Origin: Isurus oxyrinchus
Lineage: Eukaryota
Reading direction: 5' to 3'
Assembly: GCA_026770705.1 (NCBI GenBank)
Contig: JANJGN010000052.1
Span: 2,046,001-2,110,000, forward strand
Length of the DNA: 64,000 nt
The position numbers and the translations under genes were made by a program. The notes beneath the pieces were generated by a model. The model made no database searches. It saw only the letters and a list, made by a program, of their open reading frames with translations, and was not told where the DNA came from. Shown in pieces: positions 1-58,533 of this stretch (position 1 is the stretch's first letter; each line of letters opens with the position of its first letter).

Positions 1-298
1 ATCGAGCAGAAGAGTGTGATAGAGAGAGATTGTGAGTGTTAGAGAGAGAATGTGTGTGTGTGTGAGAGAGAGATAGAGCAGAAGAGTGTGATAGAGAGAG
101 ATTGTGAGTGTTAGAGAGACAATGTGTGTGTGAGAGAGAGAGAGAGATAGAGCAGAAGAGTGTGATAGAGAGAGATTGTGAGTGTTAGAGAGAGAATGTG
201 TGTGTGAGAGAGAGAGAGATAGAGAGAGATTGTGAGTGTTTTAGAGAGAATGTGTGTGTGTGAGAGAGAGAGAGAGCAGAAGAGTGTGATAGAGAGAG
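1..298. repeat. Compound (GA)n/(GT)n tandem repeat with a ~65-bp higher-order unit
   Basis: Repeated gagcagaagagtgtgatagagagagattgtgagtgttagagagagaatgtgtgtg units. Confidence 0.9.
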
Positions 299-789
299 TT
301 CTAATCAAATCAAGGTTCGTTCTTTGTTTGTCTTTGGTGGGCTTCCCCAGGTGATTGATGTCTCGTTGTTGTTAATGGGCTCGCATGATGTTTATCATTG
401 TCTTCCTGCCCAGTAACTAGTTTTGAACTGAAAGCCATTGTATGTGTGGAGTATTGATGGGTTCGCATAATTAAATTGCCGGCCTCAGAAGTTAGGAGCG
501 ATTATTGATGCAAGATTTAGATGGGCTTCAGTTGCGTGTGAAGTGAAGTCTTTCTCTGGGTTGATTGTATTAAAGGGAAGAATGCGTATTCTGTCTCCTC
601 TCATTGTCTGGTTTCAGGCCAAACATTCCACACTGCTCTCAATAAGCCCGGACATGTGCAGCCCCAGGCCTTCATGGGCCCAGCCTCCTGTCTGCAGGGT
701 TTTCCACTTAACTCAGCAGTTTAAAGGTGCAAAAGTGATATCCTTGTTGATGATATGGAAAATGTGGGAATTTTGAGAACCCTTCAAGA

Positions 790-1150
790 GATAGGGAGGG
801 TTACAGGGGCTGGAGGAGGTTACAGGTATAGGGAGGGGTGTAGGGGTTGAAGGTGGTTACAGAGATGGGGAGGGTTGTGGGGGTTGAAGGTGGTTACAGA
901 TATAGGGAGGGGTGTAGGGGTTGAAGGTGGTTACAGAGTTGGGGAGGGTTGTGGGGGTTGAAGGTGGTTACAGAGATGGGGAGGGTTGTGGGGGTTGGAG
1001 GTGGTTACAGATATAGGGAGGGGTGTAGGGGTTGAAGGTGGTTACAGAGATGGGGAGGGTTGTAGAGGCAGGTGGAGGCTGCCTTAGGGAGGGTTGTAGG
1101 GGCTGGAGGAAAGGGACAGAGAGAGGAGGTTACAGATATAGGGAGGGAGA
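790..1150 (-). repeat. ~32-bp minisatellite (L2 3'-region derived)
   Basis: Tandem gggagggttgtaggggttgaaggtggttacagagat; reverse complement of the array at 3790-4690. Confidence 0.9.
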
Positions 1151-1294
1151 CAGTCAGAGAGAGAGCGACAGGGAGAGAGAGAGCGATAGAGAGATTGAGA
1201 GACAGACAGAGACTGAGAGAGGGAGAAGAGAGAAGGAGAGTGAGAGAGAGACGGAACAAGTGTGAAAGATGGTGGAAGGGAAGAGTGGGGAGGT

Positions 1295-1650
1295 GTTGGC
1301 CTGATGGTATTTTCACTGGACCAGTAATCCAGAGACCCAGTGTAATGCTCCTGGGACCCTGGTTAGAATCCCACCACAGCAGTTGGTGGAATTTGAATTC
1401 AATAAAAACCTGGAATTAAAAGTCCGATGATGACCAGGAAACCATTGCTGATTCTTGTATTTGGGTCACAAATGCCCTTTAGGGAGGGAAATCTGCTGTC
1501 CTTACCTGGTCTGGCCTACATGTGACTCCAGGCCCACAGCAATGTGGTTCACTTTTAAAAAGTGGCCTCTGAACAAGGGCAATTAGGGTTGGGCAATAAA
1601 TGCTGGCCTAGGCAGTGATGTCCACATCACATGAAAGAATGAAATAAAAG
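1295..1650 (+). mobile_element. SINE sharing its 3' tail with the CR1-clade LINE at 10.4-12.6 kb
   Basis: Similar copy at 48700-49010; tail ggcaattagggttgggcaataaatgctggcc...gaatgaaataaaa resembles 12528-12600. Confidence 0.65.
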
Positions 1651-2229
1651 GACAGAGAGGGACAGACAGAGTCGAGAGACACCCAGAATGAAAAAAACAC
1701 AGTAAACACTGGAAAATAAACATTCTGGTCTGATCTGGTCTTGTATACCTTCAAATGGAACACCAGTAAAACAGGGAAATAAGAGTACTGGGCCAAACTG
1801 TTAGAGAGGGTCACATTTAGAGAGAGAGAGAGAGAGAGAAAGAGGGAGACACTGAAAGAGATAAGGACAAGGAAAGAAAGAGTGAGAGAGAGAGACAGAC
1901 AGAGACACACAAAGAAGTAGAAAGAAAGTGATAGAGATGAAGCAGGAGAGAATGAGGAGAAAGATAGATAGATAGAGAGAGAGGATGGTAGAGAAAGAGA
2001 ACGAGAGGAAAAGAGACAAAGGCAGAATGTGATGGAACACTGAATCCTTGTCTATGCGTTTTGAAATCCAGCCCAGAACTATCATTGGAAGATTCAGCGA
2101 GTGTCCAGTACAGGGGACCCAGCCCAACCTTCTCATCCTGACCTTCCCAGTGGGGCTGAAGAGGGCAGAGAGGAAACCTTCCTCTGTTATTCTGTTGTCG
2201 AATAAACACAACAATTCTGGAACTCTGCC

Positions 2230-2850
2230 CTTTCTATCTCACGGATTAGAATATAAGGGGGCAGAGGTCATGCTTCAGTCTACATAAAGCCCTGGCTAGA
2301 CCACACCTGGAGTCACTGTGAGACATTCTGGGCCCCACACCTTAGGAAGGATATATTGACCTCGGAGGGAGAGCAGTGTCAGTTTACCAGAATGAGACCG
2401 GGACTCCAAGGGTTAAATCACAAGGAGAGATTAAACACAAACTCGGCTTGTATTCCCTGGAAGTTAGAATGTTAAGCAGGAGATTTGATGAAAGTTTGCA
2501 TGATAATAAGGGGAACAGATCGGGGGCGATAAAGAGAAACCATTTCCCCTGGTTGGGGGGAGTCTGGGACTCGGGGTCAGAGCCTAAAAAGGAGAGGCTG
2601 ACCTTTCAGGAGTGAAATTAGGAAGTACAAAGTGTGGGAGAAATTTGGGACGGTCTTCCCCAAACTGAAACTGATGCACGATCAAGTTGTTCATTTTAAA
2701 CCTGTGAGACTGATAGATTTTTGTTATCCAAAGGTATTAAAGGAGATGGGACAAAGCCATATGGGGCTAGTTTGCAGATCAGCCATGATCTCATTGAATG
2801 GTGGAGCAGGCTCGAGGGGCCAAATGGCCTCCTCCTACCCTCATGTAATA
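2230..2850 (+). mobile_element. CR1 LINE 3' fragment, degenerate
   Basis: GLEYKGAEVMLQ / KALARPHLE / FWAPHLRKDI remnants and the 3' end caggctcgaggggccaaatggcctcctcct. Confidence 0.85.
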
Positions 2851-3219
2851 GAAACTTACCTGTCAGAAGCCAGTTTATGTTGATGTGAGTCTGAGTCGAT
2901 GACTGAACCCAGTTCGTGACTTGTTCCATACAAAGCAAGAACGTTCATGCCCTTCAATGTTCCTGGATAAACCATGAACAAAGCTGGTGACAGACAGTCT
3001 CCACATGGTAAACACTGACCAATCAACACATGACATGGCTGTTAACCCTTAAACCTCAGCGTAAATCAGTTCCCCCTCGAGGCCCCTTGTCCAAAATAAA
3101 AGCAACGCACACAATTTGTAAAATATTAAGTGTAGCAATGAGAGGAGTAAGGGGTTAGGGGGCATGCGGTTCACCTGATTTGCCGACATAAGAACCAGCC
3201 CCTCTGTTTTTGCTATGTT

Positions 3220-3435
3220 GTGTTGCGTCAATATGAACACATATTTGCACAAGGTGAAGGGCGTTGCGGAGGGACTGATAGTTCTCGGCGCCAGACAGTC
3301 AATGTCCCAGTGACCTTACTGCTGGTCCCAGGCCAGTGGGACAGGGAACATCGACACTGCAATATCCAGAAATGGGTGTGATACCACACAGCAACCCGCC
3401 CCCGGCTGTCCCCTTCAAGTGTTTCAGGTATAAGA
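3220..3435 (+). promoter_or_regulatory. Hepcidin proximal promoter
   Basis: TTGCACAA C/EBP site 3245-3252; GGCGCC BMP-RE 3287-3292 followed by AGAC Smad box 3293-3296; GC box 3395-3402; TATAA 3429-3433, about 70 nt before the ATG. Confidence 0.75.
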
Positions 3436-3500
3436 GCAGGAAGCTCCTCTAGTTACAAAGCATCAAAGCAGAGCCAGAAGATCAGAAGAGACAGGCAGAG

Positions 3501-3593
3501 ATGGGAAGCTCCCAGATGAAATGGCGACTTGTCTTGTTCACTCTGACTTTGCTGCTCTCCCTGCAGCTGAGTCACTTCTTCTCCTTGTCGAGG
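3501..3593 (+). CDS. HAMP: Hepcidin exon 1 (signal peptide) MGSSQMKWRLVLFTLTLLLSLQLSHFFSLSR
   Basis: ATG downstream of TATA; hydrophobic signal; donor AGG|gtaagc; phase 0. Confidence 0.88.
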
Positions 3594-3789
3594 GTAAGCT
3601 AAGAGATGTCCCTCTGGGTGAGATGTTTCTTGCACATGACTCTACGTCTACCACCCAGATAGACTGGTCACTTCCGCAGTTTGATATTATTATGTTCGTG
3701 CCTTTAATATTGTCGCCCTCTATGAATTTAACATCATTTCCTTCTGTCGTTTCCCCTGAAATTCTCATTCTTGTTTTCAATCCCTCCTC

Positions 3790-4690
3790 AGCGACTCCCT
3801 ATCTCTGTAACCTCCTCCAGCCCGTACAACCCTCCCTATCTCTGTAAACTCCTCCAGCCCCTACACCCCTCCCTATCTCTGTAACCTCCACCAGGCCTTA
3901 CAACCCTCCCTATCTCTGTAACCGCCTCCAGCCCCTACACCACTCCCTATCTCTGTAACCTCCTCCAGCCGCTACAACCCTCCCTATCTCTGTAACCTCC
4001 TCCAGCCCCTACAACCCTCCCTATCTCTGTAACCTCCTCCAGACCCTACAACCCTCCCTATATCTGTAACCTCCTCCAGCCCCTACAACAATCCCTATCT
4101 CTGTAACTTCCTCCAGCCCCTACAACTGTCCCTATCTCTGTTACCTCCTCCAGCCCCTACAACACTCCCTATCTCCGTAACCTCCTCCAGCCCCTACAAC
4201 CCTACCTATCTCTGTAACCTCCCCCAGGCCCCACAACCCTCATGATCACTGTAACCTCCTCTAGACCCTACAACACTCCCTATCTCTGTAACCTGCTCCA
4301 GACCCTACAACCCTCCCTATCTCTGTAACCTCCTCCAGACCCTACAACCCTCCCTATCTCTGTAACCTCCTCCAGGCCCCATGACCCTCAGAATCACTGT
4401 AACCTCCTCCAGCCCCTACAATGCTCATGAACTCTATAACGTCCTCTCCACACTATAACTCTCCCTATCTCTGTAACCTACTGTGGCCCCTACAACAGTA
4501 TCTATTTTGGTAACCTCCTCCAGCCTCTACAACCCTCCCTACCTCTGTAACCTCCTCCAGCCCCCACAACCCCCCCATCTCTTTAACCTCCTACAGCCCC
4601 TACTCACCTCCCTATCTCTGTAACCTCCTACAGCCTCTAGAACCCTCCCTATCTCTGTAACCTCCTCCAGCCGGAACAACCCTACCTAAA
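3790..4690 (+). repeat. ~32-bp minisatellite in hepcidin intron 1
   Basis: Tandem ctatctctgtaacctcctccagcccctacaaccctcc; the same unit occurs in the L2 3' region at 56500-56790. Confidence 0.95.
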
Positions 4691-4744
4691 TCTCTGGTCT
4701 GAGTCTCACTCCAGGGAATTCAGTCCCATAACGTCGGTCAACAC

Positions 4745-5340
4745 TCCGTGCTGAGGGAGTGCTGCACTGTCAGAGGGTCAGTAGTGTGGAAGTGTTGCAC
4801 TATTGGAGGGACAGTACTGAGTGAGTGCTATACTGTCGGAGGTCAGTACTGAGGAAGTGCTGCATTGTTACAGGGTCAGTACTGTGGAAGTGTTGCACTG
4901 TCGGAGGGTCAGTACTGAGGGAGCGCTGCACTGACGGAGGGACAATACTGTGGGAGTGCAGCACTATCGAAGGGTTAGTACTGAGGGAGTGCTGCAGTGT
5001 CAAAGGGTTAGTACTGAGGGAGCACAACAATGTTGAATGAGACATTAAACTGAGTCCCCCGTCTGCCCTCTCGGGCGGGTGTGAAAGATCCCACAGCCAC
5101 TATTTGGAGGAAGAGCAGGGGGTGTTCTCCCCGGTGTCCTGGGACCAATATTTATCCCTCACCCAACATCACCAAAAACAGATGATCTAGGCCATGATCA
5201 CATTGCTATTTGTGGGATCTTGCTGTGCACAAATCAGCTGCCACATTTCCTACAGTGTGAGTGCACTTCAAAAACATCCTTCAGTGGCTGTGAAATGCTT
5301 TGGGATGTGGTGAAAGGCGTTAGAGAAATGCAAGTCTGTC
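4745..5340 (+). mobile_element. SINE with expanded 33-bp units at its 5' side
   Basis: gtactgagggagtgctgcactgtcggagggtca units followed by the SINE body ending tgaaaggcgttagagaaatgcaagtc; paralog at 7045-7725. Confidence 0.75.
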
Positions 5341-5436
5341 CTCCTCCCCCTCTCTCTCCTGTACCTCTCTCTCTCTCTCTCCCTCTCCCTCAATCCTCCT
5401 CTCACTTTCTCCCTGATAAATTCTTTCTTTTTGCAG

Positions 5437-5493
5437 GTTGACACTGCTTTCGGTTCTTCGACGATTGAGAAATCTGTGGATTCCCCGGACACG
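5437..5493 (+). CDS. HAMP: Hepcidin exon 2 (pro-region) VDTAFGSSTIEKSVDSPDT
   Basis: Strong acceptor ttctttctttttgcag and donor ACG|gtaggt; 57 nt, phase 0-0, in frame with exons 1 and 3. Confidence 0.85.
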
Positions 5494-6189
5494 GTAGGTG
5501 GAAATTCATTCCTTATTTTAAGGTTTCTCCCTGCTCGTTTCTTCCACAGAAAGTTTCCTGATTTCAAGCTGATTTCAGTGGCAGTCTGTCTCGGTTATAC
5601 TCAGGAGGCATGTTTGAAATCGAGCCCCCCCGCCACCCCTTTTTTTGCAAAGCTGGGAAGAGGCAATTCCAAGGAAGTGAACATATCCCCACAGGAATTT
5701 TAAATGTAACCCACGCCGGGAATAGTGAGAGGGAGACTGATCCAGCCTGGGAGTGGGTTAAAGAGAGGCTGGGAATCGAGAGTCGGAGAGAGGGATGGAA
5801 TGGGGGAGGGAGGGATTGGAAGAGAGAGACAGAGAGTGGGACGGGGAGGGGTGAAAGGGAAAGAACATAGGTGGGAGAGAGTGACAGAGGGAGAAATTAA
5901 AGAAGAGATGCAGAGTGAGGGAAAGTGAAAAGGGAAGAGAGATTGTCCAAGAGAGAGAAATTAACAGGGAAGGGAGAGTTACAGAGTGAGCGAAAGGTAC
6001 AAAAATAGTGTGAGAGAGAGGGAGAGATACAGAGTGGGAGAAGGAGACAGGGGAGAGAGAGGGAGAGAGACAGGAAAAGGGAGAGAGGAGAGAAAGATTG
6101 GGAGAGAGGGCAATTGAGAGGAAGAGTAGGAGAGAGAGAGACAGGGAGAGGAGGAGTGGATGAGAGGAAGAGAGAGAGATATGGAGCAG

Positions 6190-6342
6190 GAGAACACCTC
6201 CTCCGGTCCCGATGTTCCTCCAAAATCTCTGACATTACTGCATCTCCCGGGTCCCCCTGATTCCCATCGCTCCACCATTGGTGGCCGTGCCTTCAGCTGC
6301 CTGGGGCCCTGAGCTCCAGAATACCCTCCCTTAACCTCTCTG

Positions 6343-6378
<36 letters not shown>

Positions 6379-6545
6379 TTAAGACGCTCTTTAAAAACTG
6401 ACATCTTTGACCAAGCTTTTGGTCACCTATCCCTAATATCTCCATATGTGACTCAGTGTTAGACTTCTCTCTGATTTACGCTCCGGTAATGTGGGCTGGG
6501 ACATTTTGCAATGTCCGAGGCGCTGTGTAAATGCAAGTTGTGAGT
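6190..6545 (+). mobile_element. L2 LINE 3' end fragment
   Basis: ggccgtgccttcagctgcctgggg and the tail resemble the end of the L2 copy at 56840-57100. Confidence 0.65.
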
Positions 6546-7044
6546 GTTATGTGGAAGGGAGTCCCCAGGCGGCAGTCAGTGCCAGAGACTGGAGTCATTG
6601 TGTGCAGACCATATCTAATCTCTCCGAATGCACAATCGGTTTGACTGTCAGCCAAAGCACTTTTGATATTTGATCCTTCTAACTGTTTATAACCAGGCCT
6701 ACATCAAACACCGAGAGGTTGGTTAATCAACAGACACCTTAGAGGATCGAGTGAAAGACAAAGAGGACTTGCATTTCTCTAGCGCATTCCAACACATCAG
6801 GACGTCCCAAAGTGTTTCGCAGACAATCAAGTGCTTTTTTTCTTTCATGTGAGGTCACTGATGTACTGTGGGAAAAGAATCAGCCATTGGCGCACAGTAA
6901 GATCCCACAGACAGCAGCATGATAATGACCAGCGCGCTCCCAGTACTTGCACTGCAAGTGTCAGTTCAGGATGTGTGCTCGATTCTCTGCAACTCTCAGC
7001 TCTGAGTTAAAAGGACCACCAGGCATAATTGAGAAATTACCGAG

Positions 7045-7725
7045 CTGTCGGAGGGTCAGTACCGGCGGGGGGGCAGGACAGTCGGAGGGTCAGTACTGAG
7101 GGGGTGCTGCATTGTCAGACGGTCAGTCTTGGAGTGCTGCACTGTCAGAGGGTCAGTACCGGCGGGGGACTGCACAGTCGGAGGGTCAGTACTGAGGGGG
7201 TGCTGCATTGTGAGACGGCCAGTACTGAGGGAGTGCTGCACTGTTGGAGGGTCAGTACTGAGGGGGTGCTGCATTGTCAGACGGTCAGTACTGAGGGAGT
7301 GCTGCACAGTCGGAGGGTCAGTACTGAGGGGGTGCTGCACTGTTGAAGGCGCTGTCTTTCAGATGAGATGTTAAACTGAGACAACATCTGCCCTCTCAGA
7401 TGGATGTAGAGGATTCCATGGCCACAATTTAGATGAAGTGCGTCAGGAGTTGGGGGTATGTGTGGAGGGGGTGGTGGGGGGTGGATGGGGTGGAGTTATG
7501 TCCGCTTTCCTGGGGCAAACATTTATCCCTCAACTGACATTGGTAAAAAACTGAAAATCGGGGCCATTATCACATTTCTGTTTGTGGGATCTTGCTGTGC
7601 GTGAATTGCCTGCTGCGTTTCCTACATTACAGCGGTGAGCTCACTTCAGAAAAAGTCCTTCCTTCAGCTGTGGAACACTTTGGGCCATCCTGAGGAGGGG
7701 AAAGGCGCTATAGAAATGCGCCATC
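7045..7725 (+). mobile_element. SINE with 33-bp unit expansion
   Basis: Same organisation as 4745-5340. Confidence 0.75.
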
Positions 7726-7808
7726 CTCCTTCCAATGACGCGCCTGATTGAAATGATGCCTTCTTTCTTTCCGGAATGTTCTCACCTATTGTCCTCCTGC
7801 TTTTCCAG

Positions 7809-7925
7809 GGCTCCTTGCTGCAGCGCCAGAACAGAATGAGCAGACAGCAGCTCTGCAGATTCTGCTGTAACTGCTGTAATTGGAGAGAACCAAATGAGAC
7901 TTGTGGTATCTGCTGCATATTTTAG
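7809..7925 (+). CDS. HAMP: Hepcidin exon 3 GSLLQRQNRMSRQQLCRFCCNCCNWREPNETCGICCIF*
   Basis: Acceptor ctgcttttccag; hepcidin cysteine pattern C-x2-CC-x-CC-xn-CG-x-CC-x-F-stop preceded by RxxR sites. Confidence 0.93.
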   Translation, partial: GSLLQRQNRMSRQQLCRFCCNCCNWREPNETCGICCIF

Positions 7926-8224
7926 ACCCTGGCCTCATTCACGCAAGGTCATCCTGCACCATGCCACAGCCTCTCCCCTCCTTATCTACTGCTTAGCAAT
8001 CTATTTCACACAGGCCCTGTTCATTAATTCCAACTGAAACTTTACCTGCGTTTTACAGCAGGGAAAGAAGCCATTCGGCCCATCTGCTCCCGGCTGGTGT
8101 TTCTGCTCCACACGAGTCTCCGCCCACCCCTTCTCCATCTCACCCCATCACCATATCCTTCTATTCATTTCTCCCTCGTGTGTTTATCCAGCTTCCCCTT
8201 AAATACATCGACACTATTCACCTC

Positions 8225-8251
8225 ACGTGACTGTGTTTGTGTCTGTCTTTA

Positions 8252-8282
<31 letters not shown>

Positions 8283-8560
8283 CTGTCAATATGTGTGTGT
8301 CAATGTGAATGAGTGAGTGTGTCAGTGTGTCTGTGTGGGTGTGTGTGACTGTCAGTGTGTGTCAATGTGAATGAGTGAGTGTGTCAGTGTGTCTGTGTGG
8401 GTGTGTGTGACTGTCAGTGTGTGTCAATGTGAATGAGTGAGTGTGTCAGTGTGTCTGTGTGGGTGTGTGTGACTGTGTCAGTGTGTGTCAATGTGAATGA
8501 GTGAGTGTGTCAGTGTGTCTGTGTGGGTGTGGGTGTGTGAGTGTGCAAGTGAATGTGTGA
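8225..8560. repeat. (GT)-rich compound repeat
   Basis: Repeated gtgtgtcaatgtgaatgagtgagtgtgtcagtgtgtctgtgtgg. Confidence 0.9.
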
Positions 8561-10396: not shown

Positions 10397-12600
10397 TCAC
10401 ATCCAGTCATGGACAATCAAACAACTCACTGGAGGAGGAGGCTCCACAAATATCCCCATCCTCAATGATGGAGGAGCCCAGCACATCGGTGCAAAAGACA
10501 AGACTGATGCATGCGCAACAATCTTCAGCCAGAAGTGCTGAGTGGGTGATCCATCTCGGCCTCCTCCTGAGGTCCCCAGCATCAGAGATGCCAATCTTTA
10601 GCCAATTCGATTAATTCCACGTGATATCAAGAAAGGGCTGAAGGCACTGGATATTGTAAAGGCTCCAGGCCCTGACAATATTCTGGCAATAGTACTGAAG
10701 ACTTGTGCTCCAGAACTTGCTGCACCCCTAGCCAAGCTTTTCTGGAATTTTCTAGTACAGCTGCAACACTGGCAACTACCCGGCTATGGGGTACGTCCTG
10801 TACACAAAAAGCAGGACAAATCCAACCCAGCCAATTCCCCAGCAGTCTATTCTTGATCATTACTAAAGTGATGGAAGCTGTCATCAACAGCGCTTGCAAG
10901 CAGCACCTGCTTACCAAGAACCTGCTCACTGACGCTCAGTTTGTGTTCCACCAGGATCATTCAGCTCCTGCCCTCATTACAGCCTTGGTTCAAACATGCA
11001 CAAATGAGCTGAACTCCAGAGGTGAGAGTGACTGCCCTTGACATCAAGGCAGCATTTGACTGAGTGTGGCAAATCAAGGAGCCCGAGCAAAACTGGAGTC
11101 AATGGGAATCGGGGGAAAACTCTCCGCTGCTTGGAGTCGTACCCAGCACAAAGGACGATGGTTGTGATTGTTGGGGGTCAATCATCTCAGTTCCAGGACA
11201 TCACTGCAGGAGTTACTCAGGGTAGTGTCCTAGGCTCAAACATCTTCAACTGCTTCATCAATGACCTTCCTTCCATCATAAGGTCAGAAGTGGGGATGTT
11301 TGCTGATGTTTGCACAATGTTCAGCACCATTCACGGCTCCTCAGATACTGAAGCAAGTTATGTCCAAATGCAGCAAGACCTGGACAACATCCAGGCTTGG
11401 GCTGACAGGTGACAAGTAACATTCATGCCACACAAGTACCAGGCAATGACCAGCTCCAACAAGAGAGAATCTAATTGAAGGTGCAGAAAATTTGGATTTA
11501 TGTTCAAGAGCCAGCCAGGACCAGCAGCTAGGGCGCCAAAGCGTACACATCCTTACGTGAAAACTTAAAAACCTGTACTAAGGGCTCAGTTGGAAATTTG
11601 CAATGAGGAAATGGGAGACACACACACAAGGACACTGGGTGACTCAATCAAGAAATGGGGAAGGTTATTTCACACCGTCCGATGGCCTTGAACCACATCC
11701 AGTCAGCCTCCGGAAACCTTTTGTATTGAACAAACATAGATTCTTTGCTGTCTCAAAAGGACAATAGCCAGTCTCTGCCCTGTAATTACTGCACAAGAAC
11801 ACAATTATCAGCCCACCGGAGGGTCATTGTGCTGTGGCCTTTGTCTAACTAATACCATTACCTTGTAACTGAGAGTAAAAATATATAAACTGTGCTCATT
11901 TGAACCTCGGTGGAGAAGCGCCTGGACTGCCCAGCGTTTGCTCCCCACATGCCTAATAAAGGAACCACTTGAATATTGCATCTGGAGTCCGAGTGTTGAA
12001 ATTTTGTACCAGAATATTCCACAGACCATTCATAACCATCGCCCCTTGGCATTCAATGGCATTACCATCAATGAATCCCCCAATATCAACATCCTGGGAG
12101 TTACCATTGAGCAGAAACTGAACTGGACCAGCCATATAAACACTGTGGCTGCAAGAGCAGGTCAGAGGCTGGGAACCCTGCAGACAGTAACTCACCTCCT
12201 GACTCCCCAAAGCCTGTCCACCATCTACAACGCACAAGTCAGGAGTGTGATGGAATACTCTCCACATGCCTGGATGAGTGCAGCTCCAACAACACTCAAG
12301 AAGCTCGACACCATCCAGGACAAAGCAGCCCGATTGATTGGCTCCCCTTCCACAGAGCTAGATAGATTCTTGATTAACAAGGGGGTGAAAGGTCATTGGG
12401 GGTAGGCAGGAATGTGAGGTTGAGGTGACAATCAGATCAGCCATGATCTTACTGAATGGCGGAGCAGGTTCGAGGGACTGAGTGACCTACTCCTGATCCT
12501 AACTCAGATATCCAGATGTTCTCAAAGGCAATTGGGGATGGGCAACAAATATTGGCCTAGTCAGCGACACCAACATCCCTGAAATGAATAAGAAAAAAAT
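10397..12600 (+). mobile_element. CR1-clade LINE ORF2 (RT) fragment, degenerate and interrupted
   Basis: KAPGPDNI, GVTQGSVLGSNIFNCFINDLP, GMFAD, NILGVTIEQKLNWTSHI motifs; stops and frameshifts; A-rich 3' end. Confidence 0.9.
11476..12032 (+). mobile_element. Solo LTR (ERV-like) inserted in the LINE
   Basis: TGAA...TTCA inverted termini; flanks taat/taac; TATATAAA 11882-11889; AATAAA 11955-11960; the LINE reads through once it is removed. Confidence 0.75.
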
Positions 12601-13849
12601 GTATCAATCAATTAAATTTATTGTTTAATCGAATTGAAATTCCTCCAGCTGCCGTGGTGGGATTTGAACCCGTGCCTTCAAAGCATTCACCTGGGCCTCT
12701 GGATCACTGGCCTAGTGCCATTCCCATTGTGCGACTGTCTGCTATCATCATGGCTCTTTCACATCGATGTGGAAGTCTTGATAACAGAAGCATTGGACGA
12801 GGTACAGAAAGGTGACAAATCAGGAGCTCCATTGCTCAATATGAACGGATAATAAAGATAAATGAACATAAACCTTCCAGTCGCTAATTAGGGAGTCACT
12901 GTGGAGCCCATGAGTCCCTCGCAGCGCTATTGCAACCTTCTGGATCCCCAGTAGGGGACTCGGGGTGCAGCTGTGTCTTCGTCATCATTTGGAAAAGCCG
13001 GAATTGTTCGGGTGCCCCTTCAAACAGGCCGAAGATGCAGTGGGTGATGTCTCCCACAGGCCCTGGGAGACCTCCCCTGCCAATTTGTTTTGTAGCTTAT
13101 TCTTCAACTGCGACATTGGATCAGCTTGAAAAAGGGTGAGGCTGAGGCAATACCACCAGGTAAGCGTCTATCCCCTCACACGTCACCCCCCTCCACCCCC
13201 GTAACCGTCACAGTCCCTCCCATCGTGCTGGAGGAGCATAATGTGCACATTCCCCTCCTTCCAATCAGTCTCCTCCCTTCCTCTCTAATCCTTGATCTTA
13301 TTGTGTTCGGGGTTGACATCCCAGTCCTCCTCCCTAGACTGTCTGATGTTGACATCCCAATGCCCCATGTAGACCTGACCTCTCTCCAACTAGAGGCCCA
13401 TTGTACTGTGACTTACAGAGACCACCGGCCCCCCTCGATTCCCACCCCCACCTCTACCCTCTATATTACCTGCTCCCCACTGACAGGCTGCAGATGCCTC
13501 CCCTGACTGGGATTGTGCCACCTGCGGCCTAGTATCAAGCCACCCACCCCCAGGACCGACGTGTGTGAGGGACTGACCACGTCACTCACACCATGCTGGG
13601 CACCACCAACCCAGGACTGCCAGGCTCTCCCCACCACACTGGACTGGGACTAGAATAGGCGTGCCAAGCACAGCTCTCTAAATCGTGGCGCAGACCCACA
13701 GCAGTCGCAATGTTTTGTGGCCCGAATCCTTGCTGAGGAACTGCCCAGCACTAAAAGCAAAAAAACTGCAGATGCTGGAAATCCAAAACAGAAACAGAAA
13801 CAGAAATACCTGGAAAAACTCAGCAGGTCTGGCAGCATCGGCGGAGAAG

Positions 13850-14300
13850 AACTGAGGGAGTGCGGCACTGTCGGAGGTTCAGTACTGAGGGAGTGCTGCA
13901 CTGTCGGAGGGTCTGAACTGAGGGAGTGCTGCACTGTCGGAGGCTCTGAACTGAGGGAGTGCTGCACTGTCGGAGGCTCTGAAATGAGGGAGTGCTGCAC
14001 TGTCGGAGGGTTTGAACTGAGGGAGTGCTGCACTGTCGGAGGGTCTGAACTGAGGGAGTGCTGCACTGTTGGAGGGTCTGAAATGAGGGAGTGCTGCACT
14101 GTCTGAGGGTTTGAACTGAGGGAGTGCTGCACAGTCGGAGGGTCTGAACTGAGGGAGTGCTGCACTGTCGGAGGGTTTGAACTGAGGGAGTGCTGCATTG
14201 TCGGAGGGTCTGATCTGAAGGAGTACTGCACTGTAGGAGGGTCTGAACTGAGGGAGTGCTGCGCTGTTGGAGGGTCAGTACTGAGGGAGTGCTGCGCTGT
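13850..14300 (+). repeat. 33-bp tandem array
   Basis: gaactgagggagtgctgcactgtcggagggtct units. Confidence 0.95.
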
Positions 14301-14999
14301 CTAAAGAACATTGTACAAATTGCACAAAATTGCATCTGATGCCTGTGTCTCATGCTAACATGAAGTTCATGCACACAACAGGAATATTTCTCGCTGTTTC
14401 TCAGCAGCAAGACAGCTTTGATATCACACCACCCACTGGCAAGTGTGTGCAGTTACAATGTGACATGTTTACATTGGAAATTTCTATTATAAAGATGGAC
14501 AGAGGAATTCATCTGATTGGAAAACGTGACAACATGAAGTAATGTCTTTGAGCCAAGAATTTTGCAGCAAAATAAGAATTTTAATCTTTAAATATCTACA
14601 GAACAGGCTGAGCATTTTAATCACTTGAGTTAATCAATGTAATTTTATTCATAAGCCAAATGCTTCTTACAATCTATCGCAGCATGAAAAAGGTGCAGCA
14701 TTCAGAAAGCACATTCCAATCAGAGAACAGAGTTTAGCAACGTCACATTTCTGTTCATTCCTATTCGACCATGTTGGCTGCACACAGCCAGACAATGCCG
14801 TGGTTATGATGTGTCCACACAGCAGGACTGGGGAGCACCAGGTATAAGGAAAAGTTTCAGCTTGCTGAGGAGAAGAAGGAGAATCTCTCGTTCCAGGTTT
14901 CTCTCCGTACATTAAGAAGCAGGCATGCCGATGTTTCATTGCACTCTGTCTGCTGATGGGAGTCCGCTTGGAAATTGTTGTTTGTGCTGATGGAAAGAA

Positions 15000-27830: not shown

Positions 27831-27835
27831 TGATT

Positions 27836-29180
27836 CACAGTGCAGCACTCCCTCAGTTCTCACCCTCTGACAGTGCAGCACTCCCTCAGTACTGACCCTC
27901 TGACAGTGCAGCACTCCCTCAAAACTGACTCTCTGACAGTGCAGCACGCCCTCAGTACTGAACTTCTGGCAGTGCAGCACTCCCTCAGTACTGACCCTCT
28001 GACAGTGCAGCACTCCCTCAATACTGACTCACTGACAGTGCAGCACTCCCTCAGTTCTGAACCACCGATAGTGAAGCAATCCCTCAGTACTGACTCTCTT
28101 ACAGTGCAGCACTGCCTCAATACTGACTCACTGACAGTGCAGCACTCCCTCAGTACTGAACTTCTGGCAGTGCAGCACTCCCTCAATACTGACCCTCTGA
28201 CAGTGCAGCACTCCCTCAATACTGACCCTCTGACAGTGCAGCACTCACTCAGTACTGACCCTATGACAGTGCAGCACTCCCTCAGTTCTGTCCCTCTGAC
28301 AGTGCAGCACTCCCTCAATACTGACCCTCTGACAGTGCAGCACTCCCTCAGTACTGACCCTCTTACAGTGCAGCACTCCCTCAATACTGACCCTCTGACA
28401 CCGCAGCATTGCTTCAGTACTGACCCTCTGACAGTGCAGCACTCCCTCAGTACTGACCCTCTTACTGTGCAGCACTCCCTCAGTACTGACCCTCTGACAG
28501 TGCAGCACTCCCTCAGTACTGTACTTCTGACAGTGCAGCACTCCCTCAGTACTGACCCTCTGACAGTGCAGCACTCCCTCAGTACTGACCCTCTGACAGT
28601 GCACCACTCCCTCAGTACTGACCCACTGACAGTGCAGCATTGGTTCAGTACTGACCCTCTGACAGTGCAGCACTCCCTCAGTACTGACCCTCTGACAGTG
28701 CAGCACTCCCTCAGTAATGACCCTCCAACAGTGCAGCACTCCCTCAGTACTGACCCTCTGACAGTGCAGCACTCCCTCAGTACTGACCCGCTGACAGTGC
28801 AGCACTCCCTCAGTACTGACCCTCTGACAGTGCAGCACTCCCTCAGTACTGACCCTCTGACAGTGCAGCACTCCCTCAGTACTGACCCGCTGACAGTGCA
28901 GCACTCCCTCAGTACTGACCCTCTGACAGTGCAGCACTCCCTCAGTACTGACCCTCTGACAGTGCAACACTCCCTCAGTACTGACCCTCTGACAGTGCAG
29001 CACTCCCTCAGTACTGACCCTCTGACAGTGCAGCACTCCCTCAGTACTGACCCTCTGACAGTGCAGCACTCCCTCAGTACTGACCCTCTGACAGTGCAGC
29101 ACTCCCTCAGTACTGACCCTCTGACAGTGCAGCACTCCCTCAGTACTGACCCTCTGACAGTGCAGCACCTCTTCAGTACA
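27836..29180 (-). repeat. 33-bp tandem array (~40 units)
   Basis: cagtgcagcactccctcagtactgaccctctga units. Confidence 0.97.
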
Positions 29181-30191
29181 GGGTCCTGAATCTTTGGAAG
29201 TCTCTCCTTAATCCTTGGGTGTGGAGGATCTCAGAGACTCTCATGTAATTGAGAAGTCACCATGAGCACAGCAGCAGTCAGAATAGACAGATCTACAACC
29301 CAACACTCACACTTGCTGCACAGTTTCACCACCAAACCACAAGAATTAAGCAAACTGGCTGAAAATAAAGAGATGACAATTCAGCCTGTGTGGAAAGGTC
29401 AGAAGTTTATTGTTTCCTGTTTGTCTCTGATCTGCAGTGCAGATAAATATTAGAAAACCACAGAATCAAACAGCACAGAAAGAGGCCACTCAGCCCATTG
29501 TCCCTGTCCTGGTCTCCTGGGACAGATATCCAATTGGTCCCAATCTCCCATTCTCTCACACTCTGCAAGTATTTTGAAAGATCCTATTGAATCTGCTTCC
29601 ACCGCCCTTTCAGGCAGCACCTTCCAGATCACAGCAACTCGCTGTGCACAATAAAACCTAACCTGCCTGCTCAGTGATGGTTACTCCCATCTGAGGGGAT
29701 TTATATTCATGAATTTGGATTCAATCTGGAACAGGAAGAATTTGAAGGACGATGGGGGAAGAGAGGTGGATTGAAACCAATTGTGTGCTTCTTTTAAAGA
29801 GCTAGCACAGCCAAGATGGCATGAATGGCCTCCTGCTATTCTATATGATTCTGTAATATGATGAAGAAAGTTCCTTTTCAGCAACAGTTTACCTCTTCTG
29901 CTGAAACTCTTCATGTTGGAGAAGAGGAAGTGATGGTTTCCATCAGTGTTTAGTTTGTGTTCCATTTCCGTTTTAACCGAAACTCAGTGAAGCGGATGGT
30001 GAAGGTCATGAACCCACCACAGCGGCACCTCCAACACATGCAGAGCTCAGGCTAGAGGCGCTTTGTTAGTGTGTTTCACAGGGTCTGCTGGAGTAGGGTC
30101 AGTGCTGAGCTTGGGGACAAGTCAGTCTACAATGCTGCATCGGAATCAACAATACAACAATATGGGGTTTGGATCGAAATAATTTGATCCT

Positions 30192-30775
30192 GTGACAGTG
30201 CAGCACTCCCTCAGTACTGATTCTCCAACAGTGCAGCATGCCCTCAGGAATGACCCTCTGACAGTGCAGCACTCCCTCAGTACTGACCCTCTGGCAGTGC
30301 AGCACTCCCACAATACTGAGCCTCTGACAGTGCAGCATTCCCTCAGTACTGACCCTCTGGCAGTGCAGCACTCCCACAATACTGAGCCTCTGACAGTGCA
30401 GCACTGCTTCAGTACTGATTCTCCAACAGTGCAGCACTCCCTCAGTACTGACCCTCTGACAGTGTGTGTTCCAGTTCAGTTTTAACCGAAACTCAGTGAA
30501 GCGGTTCTGATCCCCCAACAGTGCAGCACTCCCTCAGTACTGATCCTCCAACAGTTCAGCACTCCCTCAGTACTGATTCTCTGACAGTGAAGTACTTGCT
30601 CAGTACTGACTATGCGGCAGTGCAGCTTTCACAGTACCTGCCCTCCAACAGTGCAGCAGGTCATCAGTACTCACGCGCCAAGAGGGCAGCTCTCCCTCAG
30701 TACTGACCCTCCAACAGTGCAGCACTCCATCAGTACTGACCCTCCAACAATACAGCACTCCCTCACTACTGAACT
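30192..30775 (-). repeat. 33-bp tandem array
   Basis: Same unit as 27836-29180. Confidence 0.9.
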
Positions 30776-30902
30776 GAATTGTCTGCCTGAATTAAGTGCT
30801 TTGTGGTGAAGGAACCTACATTGATATCACACCTTTCACATTCTCAGGGTGTCTCAAAGCGTTTCACAGTCAATGTAAGTAATGATCTTTATTTGTTTTC
30901 AG

Positions 30903-31184
30903 ACACACCACAGAATCTCTCAATTAATTCTCTTGATATGATTAACGCTTCATCAATCAATATAATTGAGGGGAATTCTGCAGTGATAATCTGCTCTGTC
31001 GAGAGCTTCCCAGCTTCTAACCTGACGTGGCAACATCTTAATGTCCCAATGAACAGAACAAGTTCCAACAATGAGCTGTGGTTGGTGATTCCTCACGTTA
31101 CATCCAGGGACACTGGAGAATATCAGTGTGTGGCAGAGAATGAACATGGAGCAGTGGAGGGGTTCATAACCATCACTGTGGAAC
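30903..31184 (+). CDS. Siglec B intact third Ig (C2) exon, MAG domain-3-like
   Basis: 282 nt, phase 1-1; IIEGNSAVIICSVESFPASNLTW...DTGEYQCVAENEHG; sequons NLS, NAS, NLT, NRT. Confidence 0.88.
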
Positions 31185-31219
31185 GTGAGTTACACAGAAT
31201 TGAACGTTCTCTTGTTGTT

Positions 31220-32260
31220 AGCTCATGGGATGTGGGCATTGTTGACAAGACCAGAAATTATTGCCCATCTGTAACTGCCCCTTGAGAAGGTGGTGGTGAG
31301 CTGCCTTCTTTAACCACTACATTCCCTGTGGTGTAGGTACACCCTCAGTGCTGTTAGGGTGGGAGTTCCAGGATTTTGTCCCAGTGATGGTGAAAGAACG
31401 GCCAATATATTTCCAAGTCCCAGGGCAGACCACCACCTCAAGTTCGCTTCCAAATCACACACCTCACTGACTTGGAACTGTCTTGGTGGAAGAGGTTAAG
31501 AGTTTGGAAGGTGCTGTCGAAGGAGCCTTGGTGAGTTGCTGCAGTGCATCTTGTAGATGGTGCACACACTGCTGCCATTGTGTGCCAGTGGTGGAGGGTA
31601 TGAATGTTTATGCTGGTGGATGGGCTGTCGATCAAACAAGCTGCTCCTGGATGGTGTCGAGCTTCTTGAGTGTTGTTGGAGCTGCACTTATTCAGGCAAT
31701 TGGAGATTATTCCATCACACTCCTGACTTGTGCCTTGTCGATGGTGGACAGGCTTTGGGGGGTCAGGAGGTGAGTTACTCACCGCAGAGTTCCCAGCCTC
31801 TTACCCGCTCTTGTAGCCACATTATTTCCTGTTGCTGGGTTGTTGCCAGGGCCAATAGCCTTTGCTGTATCCAGTATCATCAGCTAATTGCTGATGTCAC
31901 GTGGAGTCAATCGAATTGTCTGAAAGCTGACATCTGTGATGCTGGGACCCTCTGGAGGAGGCCGAGATGGAGCATCCACTCAGCACTTCTGGCTGAACAT
32001 GGTTGCCAATGCTTCAGCCTTGTCATTTGCACTGATGTGCTGAGCTCCCCCATCATTAAGGATGGGGATATTTGTGGAACATCCTCCTCCTGTTAGATCT
32101 TTAATTGTCCATCACCATTCATGACTGGATGTGGCAGGACTGCAGAGCTTAGATCTGACCCGTTGGTTGTGGGATCGCTTTGCTCTGTCTATAGCATGTT
32201 GTTTCCGCTGTTTGGTGTGTATGTAGTCCTGTGTGTCACCTCAGCAGCTTGGCACCTCTG
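31220..32260 (-). mobile_element. CR1-clade LINE fragments
   Basis: Reverse-complement similarity to segments of 10397-12350. Confidence 0.8.
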
Positions 32261-38200: not shown

Positions 38201-39045
38201 TCCAATGATGCTCCTAATGTACTCGAGCCTGGTACACAGGAACTGGGGAAGGCCAATTCAGCCCCTTTAGCCTTTTACACAGGAACAGGAGGAGGCCCAC
38301 TCAGCCCCTCGAGCCTATAACACAGGATCAGGAGGAGGCCCATTCAGCCCAAGCAGAGCGTGTGGGCAGTTCCTCTCCAGGCGAGCAGTCGGACAGGTCC
38401 TGGGTAAGTAACGGATCGATTGGAAATCACGGGGGGAGTTCTGAGGGCTCCTAATCCATTGTCCTGTCTTCTAAATCAGCACCTTAATACAGTGCGGCAC
38501 TCCCTCAGTACTGATCCTCCAACATTGCAGCACTCCCTGATTAATGTCCCTCTGACAGTGCAGCACTCCCTCAGTACTGACCCTCCAACAGTGCAGCACT
38601 CCCTGATTAATGACCCTCTGACAGTGCAGCACTCACTCAGTACTGACCCTCCAAAAGTGGAGATCTCCCTCAGTACTGACCTTACAATAGTGCAACACTC
38701 GCTCAGTAATGACCATCCGACAGTGCAGCACTTGCTCAGTACTGACACTGGGGAGTTTCAGTCTACTCTGTGGGGCAGACGTCCCCTGAATGGGGTCTTG
38801 AACCCCACAACATTCTGACCCCCTGAATTTGGCTGTGAAACCCACTGACCCACAGGAGAAATTCCTGGTCAATGACTGTCCACCTGTGAGCAGAAATATC
38901 ATCACAGGGTCAGGACACAAAGGGTTAACAGTTCACCAACATCTCAAAACATGAGCTGCTCTGTCACTTTGAACCAACTTCCTCATTTTGTCTCACAGAG
39001 ACACATCAGCCCTTTCTAATTAAATACACAGAGGGAGCAGCCTAA

Positions 39046-44134: not shown

Positions 44135-45150
44135 GAACTGACAGTGCAGCGTTTCCTCAGTGCTGACCCTCCGTCAGTGCAGCGCTCCCTCATTACTGTC
44201 CCTCTGACAGTGCTGCACAACCTCATTATTGACCCTTTTCAAGTGCAGCACCCCGTCAGCACTAACCTTCTGACAGTGCAGCATTCCCTCATGGCTGACA
44301 ATCTGACAGTGCAGCACTCCCTCAGTACTCACCCACCCACAGTACAGCACTCCCTCAGTACTGATTCTCTGACACTGTATCCCTCCCTCACTACTGACCT
44401 TCCGACAGTTCAGCACTCCCGCGGTACAGACTCTCTGACAGTGCAGCACTCCCTCAGTACTCAACCTCCCACAGTGCAGCACTCTATCAGTACTCCCACT
44501 GTGCTGCGCAAGTTGTTTCAATCAAGATTGGTGCCCAAAGAGGGAGGTTCCATTGCTACATCATTGAAATCAGTGAAAATTATTTTTAGGCTTACGGGAA
44601 CAAGACTTAGTTCCTCAAATCCTTTCTTTTGCAATAACACACAGTACAAGAATCTCTGTTTAAATAAATTCCAGTTAAACTTTGCCATGAAAGGATATCT
44701 GCTCTTACTCCGCTCTACCTCAGTATTAACCATCCCACAGTCCGGCACCCCCTCAATACTGAGCCTCCGACTGTGTGGAACTCACTCAGTACAGACACGC
44801 TGACTGTTCAGCACTCCCACATTACTGACCATCTGATAGTGCAGCACTCCCTCATCAGTGACCCTCTGACAGTGCAGCACTCCCACATTACTGACCCTCT
44901 GACAGTGCAGCACTCCCACATTACTGACCCTCTGACAGTGCAGCACTCCCTCACTACTGTCCCTCCTACATAGCAGCACTCCCTCATTACTGAACCTCTG
45001 ACAATGCAGCACTCCCACATTGCTCACCCTCTGATATTGCAGCACCCCCACATTACTGACCCTCTGCTAGTGCAGCACTCCCTCAGTACTGACCCTCCCA
45101 CAGTGCAGCACTCCCACAGTACTGTCCCACTGACAGTGCAGCACTCCCTC
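44135..45150 (-). repeat. 33-bp arrays (two blocks)
   Basis: cagtgcagcactccctcagtactgaccctc units at 44135-44500 and 44770-45150. Confidence 0.9.
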
Positions 45151-45374
45151 CGTAATGATAACAGGGATCGTTGAAATGAATCATAAGGCCAGAGACCTGT
45201 ATTGGGAACTCTTATCGCCTGAGTTTCAGCCTCCGAGGTGAGGGGGAGGAGTCTAATCCCACGGAGCCAATGGAGAAGCTTCATGACTATAGATGCCCAT
45301 ATATGAGCTGACAGATCATCAGATGGTAAACGTTTTGCTGAGAGCACAAAACATCCTCGATCTTCTCACTGGTT

Positions 45375-55248: not shown

Positions 55249-55449
55249 GTAAGTGCTGTGTTATAATTACTCAACAATTCACATTCAACACTCAATGGGA
55301 AATAATAGTGTTTGATTTGCTTGTTTTTTGGCCGTGTTAACCAGCGTCACTATTTTTAATGATTTGTCTATTTCTACTCCCAGATCCATGAGCTTATTGT
55401 GTGTGATTGAATCCACATCATAGCTGTAACGTAAACCGAGCTGAGGGGT

Positions 55450-58415: not shown

Positions 58416-58533
58416 TAATTTGTTGCCATTCTCCTCAGTATTAACCATCCCCCCAATTCAGCCTCATCTGTAAAGTTGAGTCTAGTGGATCCACAAACCA
58501 TCCAGAGTTAAATATTGAGATTTCTCTCCCCAG

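What the first reader, a model, noticed from the sequence alone, without database searches (positions are those of the whole stretch)
7809..7925. Atypical hepcidin: no ferroportin-type N-terminus, a doubled hairpin loop with an N-glycosylation sequon, and two minimal convertase sites
Seen: the predicted mature peptide MSRQQLCRFCCNCCNWREPNETCGICCIF keeps all 8 Cys. The loop between Cys5 and Cys6 is 8 residues (NWREPNET) and contains N-E-T. The processing region has RQNR and RMSR, giving a 29-mer or a 26-mer, rather than R-x-K/R-R. Known: human hepcidin has a 4-residue loop (HRSK); its N-terminal DTHFP (QSHLS in fish HAMP1) is needed for ferroportin down-regulation, and fish HAMP2 paralogs lacking it are mainly antimicrobial. 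Inference: this is a functionally shifted or glycosylated hepcidin, or a paralog. The gene is not represented as such in the ORF track.
Basis: partly seen in the sequence, partly recalled or inferred. Interest (0 to 1): 0.85.

Follow-up and report, generated by a model that had tools for sequence, protein, structure and literature searches.

The report
Expressed long-loop hepcidin gene copy
This is a real, correctly spliced hepcidin-family gene whose peptide has a hairpin loop twice the usual length and an altered start. It is one of many similar copies in this genome, and the same animal also transcribes a hepcidin with the usual iron-hormone start, so this one is a side branch of unknown function, not the animal's only hepcidin.

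Summary
A three-exon hepcidin gene (3501-3593, 5437-5493, 7809-7925) encodes an 88-aa prepropeptide. Exon 3 passes Pfam Hepcidin (33.6 bits, cut-off 27). It has 8 Cys, an 8-residue Cys5-Cys6 loop NWREPNET with an N-E-T sequon, and two overlapping R-x-x-R sites.

Both predicted junctions appear as GT..AG joints in RNA-like contigs of two runs from one sample (10 and 9 contigs in X1, 1 each in X4). Most junction and 3'UTR depth carries letters that differ from this copy, so other copies or alleles dominate. Transcription of this exact copy is not shown.

New here:
- One contig in the same sample follows exon 3 to 7841, then reads H-L-S-I-C-M-Y-C-C-G in frame. That is a canonical iron-hormone-type start.
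- Another contig encodes a basic 8-residue loop, NKKGTKKT, without the sequon.

The "paralog" reading is therefore supported. "Antimicrobial" is not: formal charge is +1 (29-mer) or 0 (26-mer). Loop length alone says little about ferroportin, because the loop is extracellular in the complex. Glycosylation is untested.

The scan has already found this long-loop hepcidin many times elsewhere in this genome. I found no orthologues and did not verify the taxon. Verdict: new variant of a known kind, moderate interest.

The parts
3287..3292 (+). GGCGCC hexamer followed by AGAC, about 170 bp upstream of the transcript start. It resembles a BMP-responsive element; this is a sequence match only.
   Evidence: the only GGCGCC in 2000-3500; not tested for function
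3429..3435 (+). TATA box (TATAAGA), about 25-30 bp upstream of where the contigs begin
   Evidence: an X4 contig begins at 3457 (table 8, record 9)
3457..3593 (+). Exon 1: 5'UTR from about 3457 and CDS 3501-3593 (31 aa, MGSSQMKWRLVLFTLTLLLSLQLSHFFSLSR, a signal peptide with a hydrophobic core). Donor GT at 3594.
   Evidence: The X4 contig covers 3457-3592 with 0 differences and joins to exon 2. The 3593/5437 joint is seen in 10 X1 contigs and 1 X4 contig.
5437..5493 (+). Exon 2: 19 aa of pro-region (VDTAFGSSTIEKSVDSPDT), phase 0 on both sides
   Evidence: joints on both sides
7809..7925 (+). Exon 3 coding part: end of the pro-region, convertase sites, mature peptide and stop codon
   Evidence: The 5493/7809 joint (GT..AG) is seen in 9 X1 contigs and 1 X4 contig.
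7824..7844 (+). Two overlapping minimal convertase motifs: R-Q-N-R (7824-7835) and R-M-S-R (7833-7844)
   Evidence: cleavage is inferred, not shown
7836..7922 (+). Predicted 29-residue mature peptide MSRQQLCRFCCNCCNWREPNETCGICCIF. It has 8 Cys and the same six-residue register before Cys1 as hepcidin-25/26.
7878..7901 (+). Enlarged hairpin loop NWREPNET between Cys5 and Cys6, with the N-E-T sequon at 7893-7901
   Evidence: 4-residue insertion relative to bass hepcidin and to the Pfam profile
7926..8200 (+). 3'UTR, at least to 8200. No AATAAA was seen on reading through 8230. Transcribed copies diverge from this copy at 8091/8092 and from 8175 on.

Best explanation
This is an intact member of a multi-copy, lineage-specific 'long-loop' branch of the hepcidin (HAMP) family, lying beside Siglec/CD22-like Ig genes as HAMP does in mammals.

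Shown: the three-exon structure, family membership, the spliced form in RNA-like contigs, and at least three hepcidin types in one sample's contigs.

Inferred: exon 1 gives a signal peptide. A furin-type convertase cuts after R-Q-N-R, at the same register as in canonical hepcidins, releasing a 29-mer that folds into the four-disulfide hairpin with an 8-residue turn. The Arg that replaces the canonical His3 creates a second R-x-x-R site, which could trim the peptide to a 26-mer starting with Gln.

Positions 3-5 of the mature peptide are replaced, and the same animal makes a hepcidin with the canonical x-S-H-L-S-I-C start. This peptide is therefore most likely not the ferroportin-regulating hormone. 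It is more likely a diverged secreted paralog with some other role, probably in host defence or immune modulation. With a charge of +1 or 0, it would not work by classical cationic membrane attack.
For: - Family: Pfam Hepcidin 33.6 bits against a cut-off of 27 on exon 3. The best PDB match is bass hepcidin 1s6w (weak, E 0.66), with all Cys aligned and a 4-residue loop gap. It is the only such Cys pattern in the window.
- Gene model: consensus splice sites, phase-0 introns, TATA box.
- Splicing: GT..AG joints at 3593/5437 (10 contigs in X1, 1 in X4) and 5493/7809 (9 in X1, 1 in X4). Contigs lie over all three exons.
- Paralogy: an X1 contig matches up to 7841, then reads CACCTCTCGATCTGCATGTACTGCTGTGGC, which is HLSICMYCCG in frame. 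Another X1 contig joins at 7897 after AACAAGAAAGGCACAAAGA, giving the loop NKKGTKKT (table 7). Ten different contigs cross one junction, which implies several expressed variants.
- Earlier scan notes report many such copies and 'at least two hepcidin types'; these are leads only.
- Synteny: V-set/Ig_CD22 exons at 54855-55340 and 58515-58985, and an Ig exon at 30803-31285.
- N-terminus comparison with sea bass Hamp1/Hamp2 peptides from PMC5665920; charges.
Against: - No function was tested.
- The canonical-type and basic-loop paralogs each rest on one contig's loose end of about 19-35 letters.
- The runs are Logan contigs whose RNA status is the tool's guess. Contigs cannot give expression level or assign reads to a copy.
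- Most depth differs from this copy: the C5492T-type joint (letter T between 5491 and 7808) has depth 13,927 against 2,475 for the form laid without the change (at 90% likeness or more). At 8091/8092, 97-99% of depth carries other letters. At 7921, T>A (F38Y) carries 61% of depth.
- The peptide keeps L6, C7, R8, F9 and an aromatic C-terminus. The loop is extracellular in the ferroportin complex (PMC8235187). Residual ferroportin activity is therefore not excluded.
- No orthologue was retrieved, so the age of the branch is unknown.
Confidence: 0.65

Rival explanations
1. It is still a ferroportin ligand: the ordinary, or an alternative, iron-regulatory hepcidin of this lineage. The long loop is a neutral elaboration of a part that stays outside the transporter.
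For: - The register and S2, L6, C7, R8, F9 are as in sea bass Hamp1.
- The C-terminal residue is aromatic, as in fish hepcidins.
- The loop is 'highly variable' and 'largely extracellular' in the complex (PMC8235187).
- A GGCGCC BMP-RE-like hexamer lies upstream of the TATA box.
- The long-loop form covers most contigs laid on exon 3.
Against: - His3 and the hydrophobic residue 4 are replaced by Arg and Gln.
- The new Arg adds a convertase site that would remove the N-terminal three residues.
- A canonical SHLSIC-type transcript exists in the same sample.
- A single GGCGCC is a weak match, and no STAT motif (TTCNNNGAA) was found in 2000-3500.
Confidence: 0.15
2. The loop Asn (N-E-T) is N-glycosylated, so the secreted product is a glycopeptide hepcidin. 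This is compatible with either functional reading.
For: - It is an N-x-T sequon without Pro at x, in an enlarged and presumably exposed turn.
- Among the listed differences at 10% or more of depth, only 7921 T>A falls in coding exon 3, so most laid contigs keep NWREPNET. 47 further differences were not shown.
Against: - The sequon sits 9 residues from the C-terminus of an 88-aa precursor, next to a disulfide Cys. Such late sequons depend on post-translocational glycosylation and are often skipped (my own knowledge).
- The co-expressed NKKGTKKT loop variant has no sequon.
- A search for hepcidin together with 'N-glycosylation site' listed no paper holding both terms among the 12 shown.
Confidence: 0.15
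3. This particular copy is silent or poorly processed, and all the RNA signal comes from near-identical sister copies or alleles.
For: - The dominant junction contig carries ACG>ATG at the last codon of exon 2.
- 97-99% of depth differs at 8091/8092.
- A contig diverges from the window at 8175.
- Contigs over unique intron sequence differ from the window at 0-7 places per 145-360 letters.
- No AATAAA was seen in 7926-8230.
Against: - The reading frame, splice sites, TATA box and Kozak context are all intact.
- An X4 contig matches 3457-3592 with 0 differences and carries the exon 1-2 joint.
- An X4 contig matches intron 7570-7794 with 0 differences.
Confidence: 0.25

Closest known systems
Teleost Hamp2-type hepcidins (e.g. 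sea bass Hamp2, HSSPGGCRFCCNCCPNMSGCGVCCRF; PMC5665920)
   Same: A multi-copy paralog beside a canonical type. The CRFCCNCC core is identical. The canonical His-containing N-terminus is lost. The prepro part is conserved while the mature part varies.
   Different: - The loop is 8 residues, not 5.
- Charge is near neutral (+1 or 0), against +2.
- The convertase motif is R-x-x-R, not R-x-K/R-R.
- An N-x-T sequon is present.
- The duplication is almost certainly independent, not orthologous to teleost hamp2. This is inferred; no tree was possible.
Iron-regulatory hepcidin (human hepcidin-25; teleost Hamp1, QSHLSLCRWCCNCCRGNKGCGFCCKF)
   Same: The gene has three exons, 8 Cys and six residues before Cys1. 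S2, L6, C7, R8 and F9 are shared with Hamp1. The gene lies next to Siglec/CD22-like genes, as human HAMP lies next to MAG and CD22 (the human locus order is from my own knowledge).
   Different: H3, L/F4 and S/P5 are replaced by R-Q-Q. The loop is doubled (8 residues against 4-5). No polybasic furin site. Charge is much lower.
N-terminally truncated hepcidin-20/-22 (mammals)
   Same: A cut at the second site (RMSR) would leave only three residues before Cys1. This resembles the truncated forms, which lack ferroportin activity (my own knowledge).
   Different: Here the truncation would be encoded by a convertase site in the precursor, not produced by degradation in the circulation. It has not been shown to occur.

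Membership tests
Hepcidin family (Pfam PF06446) | Profile match above the curated threshold | tested here: met
   33.6 bits, E 5e-8, cut-off 27; residues 5-38 on profile positions 24-53 of 53
Hepcidin family (Pfam PF06446) | Eight Cys in the spacing C-x2-CC-x-CC-loop-C-x2-CC at the C-terminal end of the precursor | tested here: met
   All Cys align to bass hepcidin 1s6w. The loop is 4 residues longer.
Hepcidin family (Pfam PF06446) | Three-exon gene with a signal peptide in exon 1 and the mature peptide in exon 3 | tested here: met
   joints seen in contigs. The signal peptide is judged by eye (hydrophobic core LVLFTLTLLLSL); no predictor was run.
Hepcidin family (Pfam PF06446) | Pro-region ending in an R-x-K/R-R convertase site | tested here: not met
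   Only the minimal R-x-x-R motifs are present (RQNR, RMSR). This is a processing detail, not a criterion for family membership. Cleavage itself cannot be tested here.
Hepcidin family (Pfam PF06446) | Transcribed and spliced as predicted | tested here: met
   GT..AG joints at 3593/5437 and 5493/7809 in X1 and X4, which are one sample. This holds at family level and is not specific to this copy.
Iron-regulatory hepcidin (hepcidin-25 / Hamp1 type) | N-terminal D/Q-T/S-H-F/L-P/S-I/L before Cys1 | tested here: not met
   The sequence is M-S-R-Q-Q-L: S2 and L6 are kept, while H3, the hydrophobic residue 4 and residue 5 are replaced
Iron-regulatory hepcidin (hepcidin-25 / Hamp1 type) | Short (4-5 residue) hairpin loop | tested here: not met
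   The loop has 8 residues. The loop is variable and extracellular in the complex (PMC8235187), so this feature carries little weight.
Iron-regulatory hepcidin (hepcidin-25 / Hamp1 type) | Binds ferroportin and causes its occlusion or degradation | not testable with these tools
   Complex prediction takes references only for bacteria, archaea and phages, and no ferroportin sequence was in hand
Teleost Hamp2-type antimicrobial hepcidins | Cationic mature peptide with antimicrobial activity | tested here: not met
   Formal charge is +1 (29-mer) or 0 (26-mer), against +2 for sea bass Hamp2 and +4 for Hamp1. Activity itself was not tested.
Teleost Hamp2-type antimicrobial hepcidins | Orthology to the teleost hamp2 clade | not tested
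   No homologous sequences were retrieved, so no tree could be built

The most novel reading that the evidence does not exclude
This animal's lineage (a shark, according to earlier scan notes) has amplified a hepcidin-Siglec module many times. The dominant product would be a near-neutral, long-loop and possibly N-glycosylated hepcidin that is neither the ferroportin hormone nor a cationic antimicrobial peptide. That would be a third functional class of hepcidin, with its own target.
Probability: 0.1. Interest if true: 0.75.

Novelty: new variant of a known kind. Interest (0 to 1): 0.42.

Why it matters
[quoted passage not shown] How hepcidin is organised in cartilaginous fishes is almost undescribed: no paper in the searched library contains any of six phrases such as 'shark hepcidin' or 'elasmobranch hepcidin'.

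A canonical-type hepcidin and a diversifying long-loop branch expressed in the same animal would show that the split into a conserved hormone and variable side copies arose more than once in vertebrates. The branch has a conserved prepro part and a variable N-terminus and loop.

It also offers natural loop variants (acidic with a sequon, or strongly basic) for asking what the hepcidin loop does. This window's copy is only one of many and adds little beyond the family-level picture.

Tried and rejected
- **phmmer:** exon 3 (38 aa) against 1.84 billion cluster representatives gave 0 hits at E 0.001 or better. The query is too short for distant kin, so this shows only that no close relative is among the representatives.
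- **The search for homologous proteins:** I queried window:7752-7922 (exon 3 plus 19 open intron codons, added only to widen the length window to 31-100 aa), region 18-57. No candidate shared three 5-residue words.
- **ESM Atlas:** the best cluster was an unrelated plant 'hypothetical protein' at 0.76. Discarded.
- **AlphaFold2 without an alignment:** the model is two helices, pLDDT 69, pTM 0.37. That is not a disulfide hairpin, so it is unusable and no fold search was run.
- **Literature:** nothing describes shark or ray hepcidin or a glycosylated hepcidin. Preza 2011 (PMC3225996) is not held.
- **Second copy in this window:** none by Cys-pattern scan or by blastn of 3000-8300 against the window, which hit only intron satellites.
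- **Promoter:** no STAT (TTCNNNGAA), E-box or HNF4 motif (HNF4 scanned on the exact consensus only) in 2000-3500.
- **Organism B runs X5 and X7:** their small word shares came from intron satellites, not exons.
- **Not done by rule:** the joined three-exon protein was not built, searched or looked up. Exons were handled separately by reference.

Full report
**1. Observation**

The stretch 7809-7925 translates in frame 1 to GSLLQRQNRMSRQQLCRFCCNCCNWREPNETCGICCIF*.
- eight Cys;
- an eight-residue Cys5-Cys6 loop, NWREPNET (7878-7901), containing N-E-T (7893-7901);
- two overlapping minimal convertase motifs, RQNR (7824-7835) and RMSR (7833-7844), which give a 29-mer or a 26-mer.

The upstream exons are also as predicted:

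| Exon | Coordinates | Length | Boundaries |
|---|---|---|---|
| 1 | 3501-3593 | 31 aa | ATG with purine at -3 and G at +4; donor AGG\|gtaagc |
| 2 | 5437-5493 | 19 aa | pyrimidine tract plus cag\|G; donor ACG\|gtaggt |
| 3 | 7809-7925 | 38 aa plus stop | ttttccag\|G |

All introns are phase 0, and the total is 88 aa. A TATAAGA box lies at 3429-3435.

Exon 3 alone passes the Pfam Hepcidin gathering threshold (33.6 bits against 27, E 5e-8). The best solved-structure match is bass hepcidin 1s6w, with every Cys aligned and a four-residue gap in the loop. A six-frame scan of the whole window for the hepcidin Cys pattern finds only this site.

**2. Is it transcribed and spliced as predicted?**

I laid contigs of four public runs on 3300-8200.
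- In X1 and X4 (organism A, one sample), the joint 3593/5437 is seen as GT..AG in 10 and 1 contigs.
- The joint 5493/7809 is seen in 9 and 1 contigs.
- Contigs lie over all three exons and over the 3'UTR to at least 8200.

The tool only guesses that these runs are RNA. However, canonical intron-removing joints in many contigs are what spliced RNA gives.

Limits:
- These are assembled contigs, not reads, so they give no expression level and do not assign signal to one gene copy.
- Most of the signal differs from this copy:
  - The deepest exon 2-3 joint has a T between 5491 and 7808. That makes the last codon of exon 2 ATG instead of ACG (depth 13,927, against 2,475 for the form laid without the change, at 90% likeness or more).
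  - At 8091/8092, 97-99% of depth carries other letters.
  - 7921 T>A (F38Y) carries 61% of depth.
  - One contig leaves the window sequence at 8175.
- Ten distinct contigs across one junction also imply several expressed variants.
- An X4 contig does match 3457-3592 without any difference and carries the exon 1-2 joint. This copy may be active, but that is not shown.
- Runs of organism B (X5, X7) covered mainly intron satellites, plus one low-depth exon 2-3 joint in X5.

**3. Other hepcidin types in the same sample**

Two loose ends in X1 are informative (table 7).

*Canonical-type contig.* One contig follows the window to 7841, the end of codon S11. It then reads CACCTCTCGATCTGCATGTACTGCTGTGGC, which in frame is H-L-S-I-C-M-Y-C-C-G.
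- This aligns without indels to the window's R-Q-Q-L-C-R-F-C-C-N, with 17 of 30 bases identical by my count.
- It gives x-S-H-L-S-I-C, matching the S-H-L-S-(L/I)-C start of sea bass Hamp1 (QSHLSLC; PMC5665920).
- So the animal appears to make a canonical, iron-hormone-type hepcidin whose pro-region is close to this gene's.
- The shared register supports cleavage after RQNR, leaving six residues before Cys1 as in hepcidin-25/26.

*Basic-loop contig.* A second contig joins the window at 7897 after AACAAGAAAGGCACAAAGA. That gives the loop N-K-K-G-T-K-K-T: also eight residues, but strongly basic and without a sequon.

Each of these rests on one contig. Together they indicate a family with a conserved prepro part and a diversifying N-terminus and loop.

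Earlier notes of this scan say the same: many long-loop copies among Siglec genes, one 28.7 kb upstream of this window, and 'at least two hepcidin types'. I treat those as leads. The scan has found this thing before, on other DNA of this genome.

**4. What the peptide looks like against known hepcidins**

Peptides quoted in PMC5665920:
- Hamp1: QSHLSLCRWCCNCCRGNKGCGFCCKF
- Hamp2: HSSPGGCRFCCNCCPNMSGCGVCCRF
- This window: MSRQQLCRFCCNCCNWREPNETCGICCIF

Comparison:
- The window peptide keeps S2, L6, C7, R8 and F9, and has the CRFCCNCC core of Hamp2.
- It replaces positions 3-5 (H-L-S) with R-Q-Q.
- His3 and the hydrophobic residue 4 are the residues long held to be needed for ferroportin action. 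This is from my own knowledge of Nemeth 2006, Preza 2011 and Clark 2011, none of which I could read here.
- The Arg that replaces His3 is the P1 Arg of the second R-x-x-R motif. One substitution thus removes the His and adds a possible trimming site, which would leave only Q-Q-L before Cys1.

The long loop by itself is weak evidence of lost ferroportin binding. In the solved complex the loop is 'highly variable' and 'largely extracellular', while both termini are buried (PMC8235187).

The HAMP2 analogy ('mainly antimicrobial') is not backed by composition. Formal charge is +1 for the 29-mer and 0 for the 26-mer, against +4 for Hamp1 and +2 for Hamp2.

**5. Context**

- Downstream on the same strand lie V-set/Ig_CD22-type exons (54855-55340, 58515-58985) and an Ig exon (30803-31285).
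- This fits the HAMP-MAG-CD22 neighbourhood known from mammals (my own knowledge).
- There is no second hepcidin exon in this window.
- The introns hold 37-bp and 33-bp satellites.
- A single GGCGCC followed by AGAC lies about 170 bp upstream of the transcript start. It resembles a BMP-responsive element, but it is one hexamer and I give it little weight.

**6. Verdict**

This is a genuine hepcidin-family gene of a multi-copy long-loop branch. The best reading (0.65) is a diverged secreted paralog that is not the ferroportin hormone and whose function is still unknown.

Rivals:
- residual or alternative ferroportin ligand (0.15);
- N-glycosylated product (0.15; compatible with either functional reading);
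- this particular copy silent while sister copies are expressed (0.25).

I could not retrieve any orthologue. So 'ordinary chondrichthyan form' against 'lineage-specific branch' stays open. I also did not verify the taxon: run organisms are coded, and 'shark' comes from earlier notes.

Each exon was handled by reference.

Novelty: a new variant of a known kind. Interest is moderate at family level and low for this one copy.

Noticed in passing
window 7841 and 7897 (loose ends of X1 contigs): Contigs from the same sample encode other hepcidin exon-3 types. One has the canonical start HLSICMYCCG. One has a basic 8-residue loop, NKKGTKKT, without the N-E-T sequon. Their genes are not in this window.
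   Followed up: partly
window 5493 to 6697: A minor GT..AG joint from exon 2 to a cryptic acceptor at 6696/6697 (1 contig in X1). It would end the protein after AYIKHREVG*, so it is probably a non-productive splice.
   Followed up: yes
window 3795-4688; 4751-5022; 7045-7343; also 13848-14304, 27834-29182, 30185-30775, 38489-38750, 44138-45158: The introns carry a 37-bp satellite (24 copies) and a 33-bp (99-bp higher-order) satellite. The 33-bp family recurs in large arrays across the window and is covered by contigs in all four runs, including those of organism B.
   Followed up: partly
window 8232-8545: A TG-rich tandem repeat lies directly behind the 3'UTR and includes a 62-bp unit repeated 4.4 times at 95% identity. 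Transcribed copies diverge from this copy just upstream, at 8175.
   Followed up: no
window 3287-3296: GGCGCCAGAC lies about 170 bp upstream of the transcript start and resembles a BMP/SMAD-responsive element as found in HAMP promoters. It is a single match and was not tested.
   Followed up: partly
window 30803-31285, 54855-55340, 58515-58985: Ig and V-set/Ig_CD22-type exons lie on the + strand, consistent with Siglec-like genes downstream of the hepcidin gene.
   Followed up: partly
window 11038-11412: An ORF with a reverse-transcriptase match (RVT_1, 24.2 bits, below the 29.6 cut-off). It is probably a decayed retroelement between hepcidin and the Ig genes.
   Followed up: no
window 63797-63948: A run of 152 N (assembly gap or mask).
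   Followed up: no
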